DNA of 63,841 bases, counting the filler, from Ministeria vibrans ATCC 50519 (taxonomy: Eukaryota; Protista; Filasterea), in the NCBI GenBank assembly GCA_943704425.1. It is 9 parts of 9 records of this genome, joined end to end, with 100 filler letters (N's around TTAATTAATTAA, not from the genome) between each part and the next. Parts side by side here need not be neighbours in the genome. Positions count along the whole stretch, not along the records: positions 37,035 to 40,468 come from CALSCP010002371.1; positions 40,569 to 52,079 come from CALSCP010000678.1; 7 more parts are not named here. One strand, written 5' to 3'. Below, one piece after another: positions 1,748-41,493 of the stretch (the stretch's first letter is position 1; every line of letters begins with the position of its first letter). The notes below the pieces were generated by a model. The model was not told the DNA's origin and did not search any database. It saw only the letters and a program-made list of their open reading frames with translations. The translations under genes and the position numbers were made by a program.

Positions 1748-2838
1748 TTACAGAGGCTTTTTCTTCTCGTCGTTGGAAGAGGAGAAGTGGTTTGGCGCGA
1801 CCTGATCGTATGACGGGGGAAGGTCTTGAAAGACGGTAGCGGAGGTAGAGGCAGAGGAAGAGGAAGCGGAGGGGGGCATGAGAGGCGCGGAGGGGGGCAT
1901 GAGGGGCGCGGAGGGAGTGGGCTGTTGGGCGTAGTAGGGAGCGGAGGGGCCGGACCACTCCTGTGAAGGGTACGGCTGTTGCTGTTGCTGTGGAGGGTAT
2001 GGCTGTTGTTGTTGTGGAGGGTATGGCTGCTGTTGTTGCTGAGAAGGGTATGGCTGTTGTTGTTGTGGAGGGTATGGCTGCTGTTGTTGTGGAGGGTATG
2101 GCTGATGTGGTGGTGGTGGTGGTGGGTATTGTTGTTGTTGCTGCTGCTGTTGTTGTTGTTGAGAGTGGTGCGATGGTGTTGAGGAGGACACGCTCACTTT
2201 GATGACGAAGATGTCGGGTCCGCAAGGAGAATTTTTGCCGAAGAGACGGAACTCTTCAAATGCCTTCTCAAAAATGAGCTCGTACACGATGCGGCCGCCA
2301 GACCGCTGTGTCGCCGTCACACAAGCAGTAATGAGTTTGCTTGTGGCGGTGCGCATCTCATGCTGCCACTTGTCGCCGGCGGGCCGTACGTAGCATTGAG
2401 AGATGCATGGAGCGATGCACAGGCCAACGAGACAGACGGCGCACGGAATGAAGGTTGTGAAGCAGCAGGAGGCGCGCGACACGACCACGCGCATGGCGTC
2501 CGACACCGGGTCGCAGACTGCGTTGATCTCAACCATGAACTGCTGAAAGGCAGTGGGGTCGAGCACCTCCTCGAGCGCAGAGGGACGAGAGTACCCAAAC
2601 TTCAAGGCATTTTGACTGTTAAAAATAAAAAGGAACGGAGAAGAGGATAAAGCAGAGTGGGTGTCTCGCCAAGGGATGGCGGGGTGGCATACCTGCCCAG
2701 ATTGCGCTCGGGCCGCAGATAGGCCACAACGCCGGGCTCGTCTTTGGGTCCGCGGCGGTTGAAGTCGCGGTTGGCCATGGCCAGATCGCCCAGCGTCATC
2801 CAGTTCATTGCAAGCGCCCCTTCGCCCCTAAGCAGCAT
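1748..2838 (-). CDS. Cys-rich hydrophobic (Erf4/Golgin-A7/CHIC-like) protein with Gln/Pro/Tyr repeat tail; 2 exons
   Basis: Intron ~2692-2617 joins ORF 2602-2838 in frame with ORF 1748-2605; FQQFMVEIN followed by CCFTTFIPCAVCLVGLCIAPC; (PYPPQQQQ)n repeats and a PPSY motif. Family call is tentative. Confidence 0.6.
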
Positions 2839-3337
2839 ATGCCGTTCACGGAGTTAAAATACACACCCACGAACCACATTTCGACAATGTACCATGTTGT
2901 TTGGCGTCGTGGCATGATGTCAAAAATTGAAATGAAATGAATAATCTTATGATTCTTATCTAATCAACCGAGCAACGCTGAAAGCTTAAATGAATTCTGC
3001 ATTTCTGCTTATTACATAATTTTTGATGTAAATAGATATGGAGGTGGAAAATACTCGTTGGAATGGAGGGGAGAGACGCAGGAGAAGGGATGAAGTTGAA
3101 GGTGAAGCAGAGAATTTGATGGTGGAGGTAAGGACAACAAACGAAACTTTGAAAGTCACTCGTTCGCCCGCGTACGCGTGTAGGAGCGGCCTGCAAAGCG
3201 CATATGTCGACAACAGGTGGAAGATGGCGTTGTTGAAGTAGCGGCGGCGGCGGCTCCGAGCTCTCCGATGGCGATGGAAGTGGACGGAATTCAAACGCAT
3301 CAGACGATGGAACTGGATCAGCGCGTCTTGGTGTGGG

Positions 3338-4684
3338 TCAAGGGGCTGCTGACTTGGTCGAATCGATAGCAAGCATGTGCATGCACGCGTGTTCGTCGGG
3401 GGCAGGAAAGCAAGCAGCTCCATTTGTATCACAATATTTTATGTAAGACAAGCAACACTTCTTCACTGTCTCAAAGAGGCATCGTCCAAAAGTGGCGCGG
3501 AAGGAACACACCTGCCGCAGAATCGGGTACAGCCGTGGCCGAGCGAGCCCCACGCAAGTGCTCGAGCGACGTGCGTTGAGATCCCAGGAGCGTTGCTGAG
3601 GGAGGGCAGACTGGAGGCGCAGCGGGCACTCGGGTTGTTGAGCGTGCTTTTCGGATACCTCTTTGTGGCTTGCGCGAGGCAGCATGACTGGCCCGTTGTT
3701 GTTGTTGCTGCTGCTGCTGCATTTTTGGCATGGCTACCACTTTTTCTTTTGTGCCGGTGCATTGCTGTGCGTCGGTCGTCATGGCTGCAGTGACCGCGCT
3801 TGGTCTTGTCGCCACTCTCATTGCTGCTCTCGTTGCTGGTCTTGTCGCCGTTCTAGTAGTGGTGGTAGAGGGTGGTGGCGGCGGCGGTGGTGGTGGTGGT
3901 GATGGTGATGGTGTTATTGGTGGTGGAAGAGGTGCGGGTGTCGTAGGCTTGCGTGGTTTGTGCGCTTTTGCAGAGTGAAGCAGCAGTCCTCGTTGCGTTG
4001 CAAAGTGTCGCACTACCACATTCGAATAAAAAGAGATAAACAAAACAAAACGAAACACATCAAATCAGCGGTGGTCGGCGTCCGCATGCATGATGATGTC
4101 GTTATTGGCGTATAATATCTTAAGATATTCAATTTGGGCGTCGTACTGCAAGCGGGAAAGCAACAGGAGAAGACGCGTTGATTTTCGGGACTGTTTTGCG
4201 CCATTTCCATCGCGCTGCGCTCAAACGACGGTGACGAGGATGCCATTGACTGCGGCCCTGTCTCTGGGCCTGGCTGGGTGTTGCTGCTTGGCGTTGGGGT
4301 TGGAGAGGAGGTGCATGAGACAGTGGTGAGTGGCACAATGGGCGGCAGAAGTGTCGGCGAGAGCGCGTCGCTTCGAGACGGTGATCCCGCCGTCGTTGTC
4401 GCATCGTCGTCGTCGTCATTGCCGTCCAGCTGATACATATCACTGCAGCCTGCGGGACCCGCAAGGAGAGAGCCAATGGTGGCGAGTGGAGTGGCGTTGT
4501 CGTGATCGCTTCGAACGTGTTCCAACGCAAAATAGGCCAGTGTGTGCGCGTCCCTCTCCATGCCAACCCTTGTACGCTCGCAATCAACGCATTCTGCTGG
4601 CAGCTGCAAACTTGACTCCATCTCGGGTAGAAGCTCCACGGAGCCAGCTGGCTGGCCCAGAATGTTGTCAATAAACTCGTCCAT
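3338..4684 (-). CDS. Low-complexity protein with a single C2H2 zinc finger
   Basis: Splicing ORF 4013-4684 to ORF 3471-4058 yields FSCCFPACMRHFATQRGLLLHSAKAHK (C-x4-C-x12-H-x4-H). The 3' end is at 3471, or at 3338 via another intron. Confidence 0.55.
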
Positions 4685-37034: not shown

Positions 37035-37822
37035 CACATATAGCCAGTGACGTAGGAAACGGGCAAATAGCGCTTGTCCTCACGACCGATAGTATCGTTG
37101 CAAGAGTCCCTGGCCTGTTGGTCATATTCTCTCAAAAGAGGGCCGAGGTAGCTGAATTGAGTGCTGTGCAGATCGAGCTTTGGTTGTTGCACTTTGAGCT
37201 GGTACAAAGCGTATGTGGTACACGATATAATTTCGTTGTTACCACAACGCAACGAATAAGACTTTTTATCCGCCTCTGAGGATGCGAACACTGTCCATTT
37301 ACATGGCATATTAGCCGATGTCATTTCGCCCATGGGCTCTTGGTAGTGCAGCTCTGAAGCAGCATAACAGCAGTGCACAAAGGTTTTGACTCGATGCACC
37401 GTGCACATAAATCCCGCTGTTTGCATCATTTTTGGAAATTCATCGTAAATCCGAAGCGGACCATCTTCGGTGGCGAACCCGACTTGAGATCCATGGCCAA
37501 CAAAGTGAATGTTGAAGAGTGCTTGTGTACTGATCCTGAGTTTCAGATCACTAGATCGGCGGTCGGAAGCGGAAGCCAACTTAGCCAAGACCTTGACTGC
37601 TTCCTCAATCGTCTGTTTGGTGACCTGTTGGGTTTTATCGTAGGCAACCATGAAACCGCCACTCTCACGATAGAGATTTTCAAGAACCCTTGCGTCCGTT
37701 CGGAGGTCAGCCTTGGCGTCGTCCACGACAATCAAAATGAAATACTGCCTTTCAGCATTGCGTAAAATGCAAATGCGTGAAGTCGTTGATCGCTTCTCGC
37801 AAACGCCCAACAAGCTACCCAT
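37035..37822 (-). CDS. Divergent clan CD (caspase/metacaspase/legumain-fold) cysteine peptidase; intronless, 3'-truncated
   Basis: FNIHFVGHGS (His-Gly), KTFVHCCYAAS (cf. DxCySG), TVFASSEADKKSYS, SCTTYAL in canonical order; N-terminal MGSLLG. Confidence 0.7.
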
Positions 37823-38444
37823 CGTTTTGAAAATGGGAAAAGAAAGAAAAAAATTAATAAAACAATAAACACCGCTCCCTCGCCTCGTTCCGAGGGGAGG
37901 ACGAGTTACCGAGAGTGGTAGTGGCGACAAGCTCATGTGAAAACAAAGAAAGTTGCACTTGCAAAATTATTACTTTTAACCAAAATGTGCTATATATCCT
38001 TATTTTCTTTTGCTTTTATTTTTTACTAGTTCCCAAGCTGCTGAAGTATCATAGTTAATAATTATTAATTTTATCAATTGAAATATCCCTTCAGCCTATT
38101 TGGGTTGTATTCTTCTTCTTCTTTATCTCTACTTTGTTTGAACCGTTCCGACTTTTCACGTTACTACCACACGATCAAGTTCAACGAGATGCTCCATAAT
38201 TATATAGAATCAATTCTGTATAAGCATGACGTCATGAGAAAAGTGGTATGATCAGTATGATGCAAAGGAGTCAAAAACGCAATCGGTCGAATAAAAAAAT
38301 TTGTGGGTTAGGATAATACAATGAAGCCTGTTGGAAGGGTGTCGAAGACGGCAAAAGGGCCAAAGGTGCTACTTGACCCTATTGGGAAAATTTCAAGAAA
38401 TAAAAAAGCGAAAATTTCGTCGAGTTTTGATATCCTTGGGCGTT

Positions 38445-38503
38445 CCAGCACAGAGATTCAACGTTTCGTGTATTCAATACACTTCTTCAGGACTATGTGA
38501 TGG
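38445..38503 (-). ncRNA. Minimal type I hammerhead ribozyme, copy 1
   Basis: Minus strand: CCAUCACAU AGUC CUGAAGA A GUGUAU UGA AUACAC GAAA CGUU GAAU CUC UGUGCUGG; one mismatch in proximal stem I. Confidence 0.75.
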
Positions 38504-38644
38504 TAGAAAGAGGAAAAAAACTGACGAAATGAGAGGAGAGTGACTTTAAATAGGAAAAGTCTTATGCAATGGAATTATGCACTATTGCGTAAGACTCATT
38601 GCATAATTCCTTTTGCGTAATTCCTATTGCGTAAGAGGCACTTG

Positions 38645-39130
38645 TCACTCGTTGTCAGAGAGAGGTGCGACCTGGGTGTCGGCGTTGTGGCGTAGCAGTT
38701 GTCGGAGGTTGCTGATACGTGACCAGGCGAGACGGACGTGACGTAGGACAGATCGATCAGAGGGCGAGACTTTATGACGTAGACGGGCTAGGGTTAGGAG
38801 TTCCCGCCAGGGTACCTGCTCTGTCACTTGTGTGTGAGGGAGCACAAAGGTGGTTAGACGCTCTGGCGGGGCTCGTGTGTCGTCTTCTGTCGTTTGTCGT
38901 TCGCACTGCTTGCCGAGGTAGAAGTGTCGGTCGGAGTGAGTGACAGATGCAAAACAGCGAGTCGTGAAGGCTGGTGGGTAGCCTCTGGCTCGGAGTCGGT
39001 TGTAGAAGAGCTGGGACGCCGCAGCAAAGTGAGCGACGTCAGTGCTCAGGGTGGCGAAGCGGGTAAGTTCGACTTTGAGGGAGGCGCGGAATACTTCGCG
39101 TCTTTGTGGCTTTGAGTGCCTGCTGAGCAC
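38645..39130 (-). pseudogene. C-terminal (thumb/helical) fragment of Penelope-like reverse transcriptase, with no GIY-YIG domain
   Basis: VELTRFATLSTD..F....QLFYNRLRARGYPP and AWSRISNLRQLL resemble PLE GELxRy..S..RLxxRGYP and AyrRxxNLrxLL motifs; stop follows ~16 aa later. Confidence 0.8.
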
Positions 39131-39403
39131 GTTGTGTTTGTTTGTTTGCTCTTGTGTTTGTTAGTGTGGCGCGTTTTATTACTTTTGTGTGTGACTGTGT
39201 TGTTTTCTTAGTGTTCGTGATTGTTTGTTTTTGATATTATGTGTGTTGTTTTGGTATTTGTTCTTTGGTGTTGCTTGTAGTATCCTCTTGTGTGTTTTTG
39301 TGTTTGATGTGTGTGTTGAGGATCGCGATGTATTCCGAGTGGGCCCCATAAGCTGCTTGAGTATGTGTTAAACGTCTGAATACAATCGTAAAGTTCATGT
39401 CTC

Positions 39404-39458
39404 GGTTAGGGTTAGGGTTAGGGTTAGGGTTAGGGTTAGGGTTAGGGTTAGGGTTAGG
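39404..39458 (+). repeat. Telomeric repeat tract (TTAGGG)8 + TTAGG
   Basis: Direct reading. Confidence 0.97.
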
Positions 39459-39590
39459 ATAATAGAATGAAGCCTGTTGGAAGGGTGTCGAAGACGGCAA
39501 AAGGGCCAAAAGTGCTACTTGACCCTATTGGGAAAATTTCAAAAAATGAGAAAGCGAAAGTTTCGTCGAGTTTTGGTATCCTTGGGCGTT

Positions 39591-39649
39591 CCAGCACAGA
39601 GATTCAACGTTTCGTGTATTCAATACACTTCTTCAGGAATATGTGATGG
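39591..39649 (-). ncRNA. Minimal type I hammerhead ribozyme, copy 2
   Basis: Minus strand: CCAUCACAU AUUC CUGAAGA A GUGUAU UGA AUACAC GAAA CGUU GAAU CUC UGUGCUGG; CUGANGA/GAAA core, perfect stem II, AUUC/GAAU stem I, palindromic AACGUU stem III. Confidence 0.82.
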
Positions 39650-39932
39650 TGGAAAGAGGAAAAAAACTGACGAAATGAGAGGAGAGAGTGAGTTTAAATA
39701 GGAAAAGTCTTATGCAATGGAATTATGCAATATTGCGTAAGACTCATTGCATAATTCCTTTTGCGTAATTCCTATTGCGTAAGAGGCACTTGTCACTCGT
39801 TGTCAGAGAGAGGTGCGACCTGGGTGTCGGCGTTGTGGCGTAGCAGTTGTCGGAGGTTGCTGATACGTGACCAGGCGAGACGGACGTGACGTAGGACAGA
39901 TCGATCAGAGGGCGAGACTTTATGACGTAGAC

Positions 39933-39977
39933 GGGTTAGGGTTAGGGTTAGGGTTAGGGTTAGGGTTAGGGTTAGGG
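39933..39977 (+). repeat. Telomeric repeat tract (TTAGGG)7
   Basis: Direct reading. Confidence 0.97.
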
Positions 39978-40359
39978 TCCTTTGCTTTGTGATGTGACTG
40001 GCGCTGCACTAGACGTAACGTGAATGTGAGTGGCTGCGACTTTGGCGTTTGTTGTGCTCTGCTGACATTGGTGGTATGCTGTCGTGTGAGTGTGAGCTTA
40101 TAACGATGGTTATGTTTGTGGCTTGCGTGTTACTTTCACCTTGGGAGAGGTGGTGTGGTGTTGGCTGTCATGAGTAGACTGGCGTTGCGGTGGAATGAGA
40201 GAAATTTGTTTGTCTTGACTTATAGACCCTCTTGTAAGAGTGAGAGAGAAATGGGAGTAGAGAGTTAGAGAGGAGAGGGCGCGATGTATCCTGAGTGGGC
40301 CTCATAAGCTGCTTGAGTATGTGTTAAACGTCTGAATACAATCGTAAAGTTCATGTCTC

Positions 40360-40384
40360 GGTTAGGGTTAGGGTTAGGGTTAGG
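40360..40384 (+). repeat. Telomeric repeat tract (TTAGGG)3 + TTAGG
   Basis: Direct reading. Confidence 0.95.
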
Positions 40385-41493
40385 ATAATAGAATGAAGCC
40401 TGTTGGAAGGGTGTCGAAGACGGCAAAAGGGCCAAAAGTGCTACTTGACCCTATTGGGAAAATTTCAANNNNNNNNNNNNNNNNNNNNNNNNNNNNNNNN
40501 NNNNNNNNNNNNTTAATTAATTAANNNNNNNNNNNNNNNNNNNNNNNNNNNNNNNNNNNNNNNNNNNNGAGAGAGAGAGAGAGAGAGAGAGAGAGGAGCA
40601 GCAGATCGCAGAGACGGCATACTTCCGGCATACCCCGTTGCCGGTGACTAGCAGCGTCACGGGCTGCGTTGGGACCACCCCGGTGAAGATGTACGTCAAG
40701 GATGCGCCGGAGACGACACTACAATGCACAGGAGACCCGGGGGCGGGGCAGGGAAGGTGAGCGGGAACGATGTATTGTCTTGTGGGAAGTCTTGCGGTTC
40801 GTCTACCCTCCAACAGACTTGGTCTGCGATCCAGATGACGTCGTGACACACACCGGATCAAGAGCCAAGCTCATGCTGACGCTGGCAAAGACGCTTATGA
40901 GCGCGAGGAGCATGGCTTAATCTCTTATCAAAATTGACTGAAAAATTACTGAATAATTATTTTTTTCCACGTGAAAAGAACGTGAAAAGGACGTGAAAAA
41001 TCATTTGGAAATCGATTGGAAATCGTTCTGGGGCTTCACCCATGAGACAAACACCACCCCGGCGTACTGTAGCTACTACCGCCGCTTCCAGTCTCCCGTC
41101 ACTCCCGTTGGCGCTCACTTGAAACCGCGGAGCAATTTTCTCTTTTCCTTTCTCTCTTCTTTATCTCCTTTATCTCCCCTTTATCAATTCTCATGTGATC
41201 CTCTCCCGGGAGACCCTTGGGCGGCCGCCCAGCTCGCCTGCCTGCTCCAACGGCCCAACGCTAATTTACGCTATGTGCAGGCAGTGCAGCATGTGAATAT
41301 AACATGTTCTGCTGAGGCACATCTATGGATCTCTTCGTGGACGGCTAGAAACATATGTTGCCTATGTTTTGCAGGTTGTACAACAATTGATGTTATTTTT
41401 TGTGTTTTAAGCCGAGATGAGAGATCTCTCCAGATTTCAATTCTGCACCCTTTTTCACTATAGTACTCGCGATTTTTCGACTCCACTGCCATT

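What the first reader, a model, noticed from the sequence alone, without database searches (positions are those of the whole stretch)
38305..40468. Telomere-extending chain of endonuclease-less Penelope-like retroelements at an apparent chromosome end
Seen: three head-to-tail copies of one unit, each starting at (GG)TTAGG on the G-rich strand. The element's sense strand is the C-rich strand, with its 3' end proximal and its truncated 5' end distal. The ORF fragment has PLE RT C-terminal motifs (RLRARGYP; AWSRISNLRQLL) and stops with no GIY-YIG endonuclease. Known: this polarity matches telomere-associated EN-minus PLEs (Athena in bdelloid rotifers, Coprina in basidiomycetes), which prime cDNA on the telomeric G-overhang. 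Inference: this holozoan-like protist extends or heals its ends with a retroelement working alongside telomerase. I do not recall such a system being described in unicellular holozoans.
Basis: partly seen in the sequence, partly recalled or inferred. Interest (0 to 1): 0.92.

Follow-up and report, generated by a model that had tools for sequence, protein, structure and literature searches.

The report
Telomere mosaic of two retroelement families
The end of this contig is a patchwork of TTAGGG telomere repeats, truncated copies of an endonuclease-less Penelope-like retrotransposon and, pointing the other way, pieces of a telomere-targeting LINE: a known kind of telomere-associated retroelement system, here in an unidentified marine protist.

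Summary
Three copies of one element (from 38311, 39457 and 40383) each begin at GGTTAGG on the G-rich strand, with their sense on the C-rich strand. Perfect TTAGGG tracts of 9, 7.7 and 4 repeats separate them.

The ORF fragment is the C-terminus of a 665-aa reverse transcriptase. Independent metagenome contigs carry it in a 3.6-kb two-ORF element. That element has intact RT catalytic residues, a DKN(LG) motif, TERT as best fold match and no GIY-YIG. It ends in reverse-complement telomere repeats and carries a PLE-type minimal hammerhead in its 3'UTR. It is therefore an endonuclease-less Penelope-like element of the Athena/Coprina kind.

Segments 39103-39405 and 39979-40361 are not PLE. They are 5'-truncated 3' ends of an APE-type LINE (2222-aa ORF) lying on the opposite strand and always ending ...CTCGG(TTAGGG)n. 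The array is a mosaic of two telomere-associated retroelement families.

Terminal location, the order of the units and the host's identity could not be verified; "holozoan" is untested. Endonuclease-less PLEs at telomeres have been known in rotifers, fungi, plants and protists since 2007. This is a new member of a known kind, of moderate interest.

The parts
37035..38304 (.). Unique proximal flank. It holds a caspase-like gene fragment on the minus strand (about 37037-37814, cut by the piece edge) with a 95-nt GT..AG intron at 37815-37909, followed by an AT-rich spacer.
   Evidence: Single-copy depth in four runs and a spliced joint in X7. ESM Atlas neighbours carry Peptidase_C14. No Pfam match and no homologues.
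38305..38312 (+). GGGTTAGG: the only telomeric letters between unique DNA and the first PLE copy. The last GG is shared with the PLE 3' end.
   Evidence: In other copies the same PLE end is preceded by long TTAGGG runs (loose end X1 at 38305).
38311..39102 (-). PLE copy A: the last 792 nt of the 3588-nt element (element positions 2795-3588). It comprises the 3'UTR (38311-38644) and the last 152 codons of ORF2 (38645-39102). It is 97.0% identical to the full-length element and decaying neutrally.
   Evidence: blastn. 95% amino-acid identity to residues 513-665 of P0001. pN/pS about 0.9.
38456..38494 (-). Minimal hammerhead motif of copy A. The core is intact; helix I is weakened by one substitution.
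   Evidence: Alignment A3; descriptor.
38785..38798 (+). Telomere-like 14-mer inside ORF2. The consensus is GGGTTAGGGTTAGG; copy A has one substitution.
   Evidence: All four runs read T at 38788.
39103..39405 (+). 5'-truncated 3'UTR of an APE-type LINE with its sense on the G-rich strand. It ends ...GTCTCGG and is joined to PLE copy A with 1 nt of microhomology and no telomere repeat.
   Evidence: 99.1% identity to L013 4160-4485 and 98.6% to L019. L013 and L019 carry the LINE ORF.
39404..39458 (+). (TTAGGG) x 9.2, perfect.
   Evidence: TRF.
39457..39945 (-). PLE copy B: the last ~490 nt of the element. Its coding part is identical to the consensus. Its distal end merges into telomere repeats exactly at the internal telomere-like 14-mer, so the breakpoint is ambiguous within 39932-39949.
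   Evidence: 98.6% identity. 0 differences in 142 coding nt.
39602..39640 (-). Minimal hammerhead motif of copy B. It has helix I of 4 bp, a CUGAAGA core, one extra nucleotide, helix II of 6 bp with G10.1-C11.1, and GAAACGU followed by U as the residue before the cleavage site.
   Evidence: Descriptor: 1 hit per copy and 0 hits in 500 and in 200 shuffles. The MFE fold gives the same helices. Homologous motifs occur in three relatives.
39933..39978 (+). (GGGTTA) x 7.7, perfect.
   Evidence: TRF.
39979..40361 (+). LINE-related fragment. It has a 300-nt body with no match to the PLE or LINE contigs held here (39979-40279) and then the LINE's last ~80-100 nt (40280-40361, 97%). Telomere repeats flank it on both sides.
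   Evidence: A longer repeat continues to the left in other copies (X1 record 7).
40362..40384 (+). (TTAGGG) x 4.
   Evidence: TRF.
40383..40468 (-). PLE copy D: the last 86 nt of the 3'UTR, cut by the piece edge. It is identical to copy B.

Best explanation
38305-40468 is a telomere-proximal mosaic built from two retroelement families that use the TTAGGG array in opposite ways.

(1) A 3.6-kb endonuclease-less Penelope-like element carries ORF1 (385 aa), ORF2 (a 665-aa RT) and a 3'UTR with a minimal hammerhead. Its RNA carries CCUAACCC... at its 3' end. This pairs with the G-rich 3' overhang, or with a broken end, so the RT extends the G-strand by copying the element. That leaves the sense strand on the C-rich strand, the 3' end proximal and a variably truncated 5' end distal. 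Telomerase, or slippage, then lays down new TTAGGG. One truncation lies at a telomere-like 14-mer inside ORF2; a cDNA ending there would look like a telomere end.

(2) An APE-type LINE of about 8.4 kb lies with its sense on the G-strand and always ends ...CTCGG(TTAGGG)n. This is as expected if its endonuclease nicks the C-strand of double-stranded repeats and primes there.

Shown: the anatomy, the identity of both elements, the absence of an endonuclease in the PLE, the uniform polarity, and head-to-tail arrays in independent assemblies. Inferred: overhang priming, telomerase action between additions, and any benefit to the host.
For: RT identity:
- The ORF fragment matches residues 513-665 of P0001 (E 1e-90).
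- P0001 and P0083 lie on 3.6-kb contigs from at least 6 independent assemblies. Each carries ORF1, ORF2 and the 3'UTR, and each contig has a prefix equal to its suffix, so units are joined head to tail by TAACCCTAAC.
- In the 18-member alignment DKN, PK.HK, RPI, the RT3 Asp, Q..G..G, Y.R..DD and RGY are invariant. 16 of 18 members hit RVT_1 and none hits GIY-YIG at E<=1; 8 of the 18, plus P0081 and ORF1, were also scanned at E<=10 without a GIY-YIG hit.
- The AF2 model (pLDDT 77) has TERTs as its six best PDB matches.

Hammerhead: a minimal hammerhead of the PLE type (PMC4209133) lies on the sense strand 3' of the RT in four divergent lineages, with 0 hits in shuffles.

Telomere association:
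- Relative L014 has (TAACCC)12 after its 3'UTR.
- All seven telomeric loose ends in four runs read TTAGGG on the + strand, at varied truncation points.

Age and constraint: the proximal copy A is 3% diverged with pN/pS of about 0.9, the distal copy B is identical to the consensus in its coding part, and full-length copies differ mostly synonymously.

LINE:
- L013 and L019 ORFs hit RVT_1 at 1e-16 and zf-RVT. L1 ORF2p is the best sequence match in the PDB.
- The motifs GDLN and SDH are present, and Exo_endo_phos hits at E 0.097.
- The 3' end ...CTCGG(TTAGGG)n is seen in the window twice and in L002, L012 and L013. L019, whose junction base is masked by NN, also shows a LINE tandem with (TTAGGG)3 between copies.
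Against: - No long read or terminal repeat tract shows that the array is at a chromosome end.
- None of the contigs listed by read laying spans the PLE/LINE joint at 39102/39103, nor the order of the units. The chain as assembled could be partly mis-ordered.
- The constant 10-nt TAACCCTAAC between full-length units could reflect amplification by recombination rather than repeated addition.
- Rfam finds no hammerhead, and the descriptor itself imposes pairing.
- The hammerhead cleavage site lies about 150 nt upstream of the 3' end, so how a CCCUAA-ended RNA is made is unexplained.
- The P0001 Pfam RVT_1 hit on its own is weak (E 0.12).
- No reference-based phylogeny was run.
Confidence: 0.7

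Rival explanations
1. Relic subtelomeric repeats: the elements are dead passengers, and the array was shaped by unequal crossing-over, break-induced replication or segmental duplication between interstitial telomere tracts. It was not built by ongoing addition to chromosome ends.
For: Full-length units are joined by an invariant 10-nt TAACCCTAAC in every assembly. Copies B and D are identical over their overlap. Copy A is decaying neutrally. The PLE/LINE joint has no telomere repeat.
Against: ORF1 and ORF2 are intact, and differences between full-length variants from several samples are mostly synonymous. Truncation points and tract lengths vary. Summed contig depth relative to the flank differs between runs, about 4x to 30x, although this is only a rough guide. 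A likely RNA run covers the element.
Confidence: 0.2
2. One reading: a chain made only of endonuclease-less PLE units of about 1.1 kb, whose 5' parts are 39131-39403 and 39979-40357.
For: The segments sit between a PLE body and telomere repeats, where a 5' region would be.
Against: The true 5' end of the element is different: it starts TACGCCCTATGG... followed by ORF1. The segments are 97-99% identical to the 3'UTR of a LINE ORF on the opposite strand. Independent contigs leave the window sequence at 39100 and continue into the PLE RT.
Confidence: 0.03
3. Assembly artefact: real junction types, but joined in the wrong order or number by an assembler collapsing near-identical repeats at a contig end.
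For: The piece ends inside a repeat. Unitigs of all four runs break at every repeat border. Copies B and D are identical.
Against: Each junction type recurs in independent assemblies. PLE 3'UTR-(TAACCC)n-LINE end is seen in L002. PLE end-telomere is seen in L007 and L003. LINE end-telomere is seen in L012 and L013. The unique-to-PLE junction is spanned by contigs in X1, X6 and X7.
Confidence: 0.15

Closest known systems
Athena (endonuclease-less PLEs of bdelloid rotifer telomeres)
   Same: An RT ORF without GIY-YIG, and an additional upstream ORF. Short reverse-complement telomere repeats sit at the 3' end, next to a hammerhead with a small palindromic helix III. The copies are head to tail and 5'-truncated, with telomere repeats between them and the 3' end proximal (PMC8557442, PMC4209133). 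The nearest ESM Atlas clusters are mostly rotifer proteins with DUF8422 and HTH_animal (a lead only).
   Different: The host is a marine protist-like organism seen in Tara and seawater metagenomes. The unit is a compact 3.6 kb. The repeat is TTAGGG. Clade membership was not tested by phylogeny.
Coprina (endonuclease-less PLEs of fungi and other taxa)
   Same: The same architecture and telomere association. One family hit is a Puccinia sorghi RT (P0067).
   Different: Fungal and protist PLE hammerheads are described as monomeric, with a long helix III (PMC4209133). Here the motif is the metazoan-style minimal, dimer-type hammerhead.
SART/TRAS (Bombyx, Tribolium) and other telomere-repeat-specific LINEs (Zepp, GilM/GilT, MoTeR, Tx1-1_ACar)
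   Same: The LINE part is an APE-motif-bearing non-LTR element. It is found only next to telomere repeats in a fixed orientation, is 5'-truncated, and forms tandem arrays with repeats in between (PMC10088271).
   Different: It has no poly(A) tail; the element ends directly in TTAGGG repeats. Its clade was not determined. It shares the array with a PLE of opposite polarity.
HeT-A/TART/TAHRE of Drosophila
   Same: Head-to-tail arrays with the 3' end proximal, added to chromosome ends.
   Different: Those are jockey-clade LINEs that replace telomerase. Here telomerase-type repeats persist between the elements.
Telomerase reverse transcriptase (TERT)
   Same: It is the best structural match of the ORF2 model and uses the G-strand 3' end as primer.
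   Different: ORF2 shows no TEN/TRBD-type N-terminus by sequence. It copies its own mRNA, is mobile and is multi-copy.

Membership tests
Endonuclease-deficient Penelope-like elements (Athena/Coprina kind) | Reverse transcriptase with intact catalytic motifs, related to PLE/TERT RTs | tested here: met
   The RT3 Asp, Q..G..G and Y.R..DD are invariant. 16 of 18 relatives hit RVT_1. The profile hits RT structures including TERT. The six best fold matches are TERTs.
Endonuclease-deficient Penelope-like elements (Athena/Coprina kind) | N-terminal DKG-type motif upstream of the core RT (Arkhipova 2006, quoted in PMC8557442) | tested here: met
   D147-K148-N149 is invariant in 18 of 18 members, and L150 and G151 in at least 90%. 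The third residue is N rather than G. Variants DKA, DKT and DK are accepted in other PLE clades.
Endonuclease-deficient Penelope-like elements (Athena/Coprina kind) | No GIY-YIG (or other) endonuclease in the full-length element | tested here: met
   ORF2 of all full-length copies stops at the same codon as the window fragment. ORF1, ORF2 and 8 further relatives give no GIY-YIG hit at E<=10, and the 18 members of A2 give none at E<=1.
Endonuclease-deficient Penelope-like elements (Athena/Coprina kind) | Short stretches of reverse-complement telomere repeats at the 3' end | tested here: met
   ...ATTATCC(TAACCC)n is seen in the window three times and in L001-L007. Relative L014 has (TAACCC)12.
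Endonuclease-deficient Penelope-like elements (Athena/Coprina kind) | Hammerhead ribozyme motif near the 3' end or flanking repeat | tested here: met
   The motif meets the descriptor. It has all min-HHR traits listed in PMC4209133: an extra nucleotide between 9 and 10.1, G10.1-C11.1, a palindromic 15.2-16.2, a long helix II and a short helix I. It occurs in four lineages with different helix sequences and with 0 hits in shuffles. Rfam is negative, and cleavage is untested.
Endonuclease-deficient Penelope-like elements (Athena/Coprina kind) | Located at chromosome termini, head to tail, 5'-truncated, 3' end proximal | tested here: inconclusive
   Orientation, truncation and head-to-tail order are met. 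A true terminal position cannot be shown from short contigs.
Athena clade or Coprina clade specifically | Placement within that clade in an RT phylogeny with curated references and a TERT outgroup | not tested
   No labelled Athena or Coprina reference sequences were available through the tools.
Telomere-repeat-specific APE-type LINEs (SART/TRAS-like) | Non-LTR RT with an N-terminal APE endonuclease | tested here: inconclusive
   RVT_1 at 1e-16, zf-RVT, and L1 ORF2p as the best sequence match in the PDB. The EN motifs GDLN and SDH were read by eye, but Exo_endo_phos reaches only E 0.097 and there is no PDB sequence hit.
Telomere-repeat-specific APE-type LINEs (SART/TRAS-like) | Insertion confined to telomere repeats in one orientation | tested here: met
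   The 3' end ...CTCGG is followed by TTAGGG in all 5 copies where the junction is readable. In L019 the junction base is masked by NN, but (TTAGGG)3 follows there too. 5'-truncated copies are preceded by TTAGGG. The sample is small, and in L013 only 3 repeats precede other DNA.

The most novel reading that the evidence does not exclude
A free-living marine protist, possibly a relative of animals, keeps telomeres that are jointly built by telomerase, by an endonuclease-less PLE with an animal-style dimeric minimal hammerhead, and by an opposite-strand telomere-specific LINE. On this reading the PLE has evolved an internal telomere-like 14-mer in its RT gene that lets aborted cDNAs be capped at once. 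The elements would act as a back-up healing system for broken ends; the innermost copy is joined to unique DNA by only 8 telomeric letters.
Probability: 0.2. Interest if true: 0.65.

Novelty: new member of a known kind. Interest (0 to 1): 0.45.

Why it matters
Endonuclease-less PLEs are the closest mobile relatives of telomerase, and few lineages with clean, compact, apparently active copies are known. This one offers three things. It gives a small (3.6 kb), intact two-ORF element with a conserved minimal hammerhead, recoverable from many marine samples. It gives a family of about 18 related endonuclease-less RTs from metagenomes that could widen the known range of such elements. And it shows a PLE and a LINE of opposite polarity sharing one telomere array, which allows two priming strategies to be compared in the same host. 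If the host proved to be a close relative of animals, the animal-type hammerhead would bear on when that ribozyme form arose.

Tried and rejected
- Pfam on the 161-aa fragment and on the flanking gene gave nothing.
- Rfam at E<=1 to 10 on the piece, on the hammerhead region alone and on six related loci found no hammerhead and only noise.
- The word-indexed protein search on the flanking gene gave no hit, so the host lineage could not be inferred. The ESM Atlas gave only a caspase-like lead.
- The Gladyshev and Arkhipova 2007 paper is not held.
- No paper mentions the assemblies GCA_041166445 or GCA_041294345.
- The S. rosetta transposon survey (PMC6875170) mentions neither PLEs nor telomeric elements, and nothing ties this piece to that species.
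- A PDB sequence search with the presumed endonuclease region of the LINE gave nothing.
- The ORF1 proteins of relatives share only a marginal IP.SLRVK..LS motif.
- The idea that 39321-39403 is the 5' end ('head') of the PLE or of a host RNA was rejected once L013 showed it to be the 3' terminus of a LINE.
- The z-score of the hammerhead fold is not significant (-0.84), as expected for so short a motif.
Full report
ANATOMY

The piece (37035-40468) begins with about 1.27 kb of single-copy DNA. This holds a minus-strand gene fragment and an AT-rich spacer. From 38305 onward everything is repeated DNA. TRF finds three perfect telomeric tracts, all reading TTAGGG on the + strand: 39404-39458 (9.2 copies), 39933-39978 (7.7) and 40360-40384 (4.2). 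Repeat analysis and blastn against a full-length element recovered later define three copies of one element on the minus strand:
- Copy A: 38311-39102, 792 nt, 97.0% identical to the full-length element.
- Copy B: 39457-~39945, about 490 nt, 98.6% identical.
- Copy D: 40383-40468, cut by the piece edge.

Each copy starts in the same register after ...GGGTTAGG. The first copy is joined to unique DNA by only those 8 telomeric letters.

WHAT THE ELEMENT IS

The 161-aa frame at 38645-39130(-) has no Pfam hit on its own. An exhaustive HMMER search finds a 665-aa protein, P0001, that is 95% identical over its last 153 residues and ends at the same stop.

P0001 and its near-identical variant P0083 are encoded on 3.3-3.9-kb contigs from at least six independent metagenome and Logan assemblies. 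All contigs show the same layout: ORF1 (385 aa), ORF2 (665 aa) and a ~340-nt 3'UTR. In most contigs the prefix equals the suffix. Units therefore follow each other head to tail, joined only by TAACCCTAAC. In L002 and L007 the 3'UTR runs into longer (TAACCC)n.

Independent unitigs of runs X1, X6 and X7 follow the window from 38305 to 39100. They then continue into this RT sequence instead of the window's sequence.

Evidence that ORF2 is a PLE-type RT:
- ORF2 is 22-30% identical to 17 other proteins of 560-920 aa. In the joint alignment DKN, PK.HK, RPI, the RT3 aspartate, Q..G..G, Y.R..DD and RGY are invariant.
- 16 of the 18 proteins hit RVT_1 and none hits GIY-YIG at E<=1. 8 of the 18, plus P0081 and ORF1, were also scanned at E<=10 without a GIY-YIG hit.
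- A profile of the alignment hits solved RTs including TERT.
- An AlphaFold model (pLDDT 77) has TERTs as its six best Foldseek matches, ahead of retron, group II, R2 and L1 RTs.
- The precomputed Pfam families are DUF8422 and HTH_animal.
- The nearest ESM Atlas clusters are mainly rotifer proteins with those families (a lead only).
- One family member is annotated as a Puccinia sorghi RT.

HAMMERHEAD

Craig et al. 2021 state that endonuclease-less PLEs combine reverse-complement telomere repeats with an adjacent hammerhead. Rfam finds none. Cervera and De la Pena 2014 explain that PLE hammerheads are minimal and escape standard models. [quoted passage not shown]

A descriptor with those traits hits once per PLE copy, on the sense strand in the 3'UTR. 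In copy B this is 39602-39640. In copy A it is 38456-38494, where one helix I base is changed. There were no hits in 500 shuffles.

A relaxed descriptor finds the same kind of motif on the sense strand 3' of the RT in three further, divergent relatives: L008, L014 and L015-L017. Their helix sequences are entirely different. L014 carries the U3-A8 core variant described in that paper and lies 55 nt before (TAACCC)12. There were no hits in 200 shuffles.

Pair counts give 95.8% of cells paired, with changes on both sides in 10 of 12 pairs. This is partly circular, because the descriptor demands pairing. The independent evidence is the recurrence at the same place and strand against a null of about zero. 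The MFE fold reproduces helices I and II. Cleavage itself is untested.

Segments 39103-39405 and 39979-40361 are not PLE. An exact-pattern scan of metagenome contigs with the shared 31-mer found two Tara scaffolds. L013 carries a 1324-aa ORF on the opposite strand (RVT_1 at 1e-16, zf-RVT). Its TG-rich 3'UTR is 99% identical to 39100-39425 and ends ...GTCTCGG(TTAGGG)3.

The full ORF is P0085 (2222 aa, contig L019). It has L1 ORF2p as its best sequence match among solved structures. It also has a weak Exo_endo_phos hit (E 0.097) and the APE motifs GDLN and SDH, read directly from the sequence.

L019 is itself a head-to-tail LINE array with (TTAGGG)3 between units. The same LINE end follows (TAACCC)n after a PLE 3'UTR in L002.

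The LINE therefore has its sense on the G-rich strand and always abuts TTAGGG at its 3' end. In the window, one 5'-truncated copy is fused directly to the truncated end of PLE copy A at 39102/39103, with 1 nt of microhomology and no repeat. A second LINE-related fragment sits between two telomere tracts. Its first 300 nt match nothing retrieved here. They may belong to a second LINE subfamily or to a non-autonomous rider.

POLARITY, AGE, ACTIVITY

- All seven telomeric loose ends reported by read laying in four runs read TTAGGG-like on the + strand, at many different truncation points.
- Copy A (proximal) is 3% diverged with pN/pS of about 0.9. The coding part of copy B (distal) is identical to the consensus. 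The four distinct full-length ORF2 variants differ mostly or only synonymously. This is what sequential distal addition by a constrained master lineage predicts, but it rests on only two copies.
- Summed contig depths suggest a few to a few tens of PLE copies and many more LINE 3' ends. The tool warns that such depths are not copy numbers.
- Run X7 shows a 95-nt GT..AG splice in the flanking gene, so it contains RNA. Its contigs also cover the PLE nearly full length. This is a lead, not proof, that the element is transcribed.

MECHANISM

The structure fits the published model for endonuclease-less PLEs. A CCCUAA-bearing RNA 3' region pairs with the G-overhang. The RT extends the G-strand, synthesis stops at variable points, and telomerase re-caps the end.

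Copy B ends exactly at a telomere-like 14-mer inside ORF2 (consensus CCTAACCCTAACCC on the sense strand). A cDNA stopping there would already end in telomere sequence. Recombination between that motif and the array would give the same product.

The LINE's opposite polarity fits endonuclease nicking of the C-strand, as for the telomere-specific LINEs reviewed in PMC10088271.

Unexplained points: the predicted hammerhead cleavage site lies about 150 nt upstream of the element's 3' end, so how a repeat-ended template arises is not clear. The invariant 10-nt spacer between full-length units may be templated or may reflect array amplification.

LIMITS

- The piece ends inside copy D, so a chromosome end is not shown.
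- None of the contigs listed by read laying spans the 39102/39103 joint or the order of the units.
- The host could not be identified. The flanking gene has no homologues in the indexed search and only a caspase-like lead. 'Holozoan' is therefore untested.
- No reference-labelled phylogeny could be built.

VERDICT

The array is a two-family mosaic rather than a PLE chain. The kind of system has been known since 2007 in rotifers, fungi, plants and protists. It is a new member of a known kind and of moderate interest. Its most useful novelties are the conserved minimal hammerhead across a metagenomic family of endonuclease-less RTs and the co-resident opposite-strand LINE.

Noticed in passing
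window 39103-39405 and 40280-40361; L013 16-4485; L019 400-8818: A telomere-repeat-specific LINE of about 8.4 kb with a 2222-aa ORF2 (P0085) and APE-type motifs. Its sense is on the G-rich strand and it has no poly(A): it ends ...CTCGG(TTAGGG)n. It forms its own head-to-tail arrays and appears far more abundant than the PLE.
   Followed up: partly
window 39979-40279: A 300-nt sequence with no match to the PLE or LINE contigs, fused to the LINE's last ~80-100 nt and flanked by telomere repeats. It may be a second LINE subfamily or a non-autonomous element that borrows the LINE 3' end. In other copies it extends further left (X1 record 7).
   Followed up: partly
window 37815-37909 (minus strand): Run X7 alone joins 37814 to 37910, skipping 95 nt with ends CT..AC on the + strand. 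This is a GT..AG intron in the 5' part of the flanking gene. X7 therefore contains spliced RNA, and the long ORF's N-terminus as listed (start at 37936 or 37822) is probably wrong.
   Followed up: no
window 37037-37814 (minus strand): The flanking gene fragment has no Pfam hit and no homologue in the indexed search. Its ESM Atlas neighbours carry Peptidase_C14 (caspase-like), and it has an HG...C pattern.
   Followed up: partly
window 38582-38634 and 39731-39782: The PLE 3'UTR opens, right after the stop codon, with 3.7-3.8 copies of a 14-nt repeat (CTATTGCGTAATTC) that also forms an imperfect palindrome. It could be a protein- or RT-binding site.
   Followed up: no
window 38785-38798; L001 3366-3379: A telomere-like 14-mer lies inside the RT coding sequence (coding LLTLTR) and is conserved in all full-length copies. 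Copy B switches to telomere repeats exactly there.
   Followed up: partly
L013 4486-4776: After the LINE end and only 3.3 TTAGGG repeats comes unrelated, non-telomeric DNA ending in a T-run. LINE copies therefore also occur beside very short repeat tracts.
   Followed up: no
L008, L014, L015-L018, L010-L011: A metagenomic family of endonuclease-less two-ORF RT elements of 3-4 kb. Several are assembled as circular-looking (tandem) contigs. L014 carries (TAACCC)12 at its 3' end. The ORF1 proteins share only a marginal IP.SLRVK..LS motif.
   Followed up: partly
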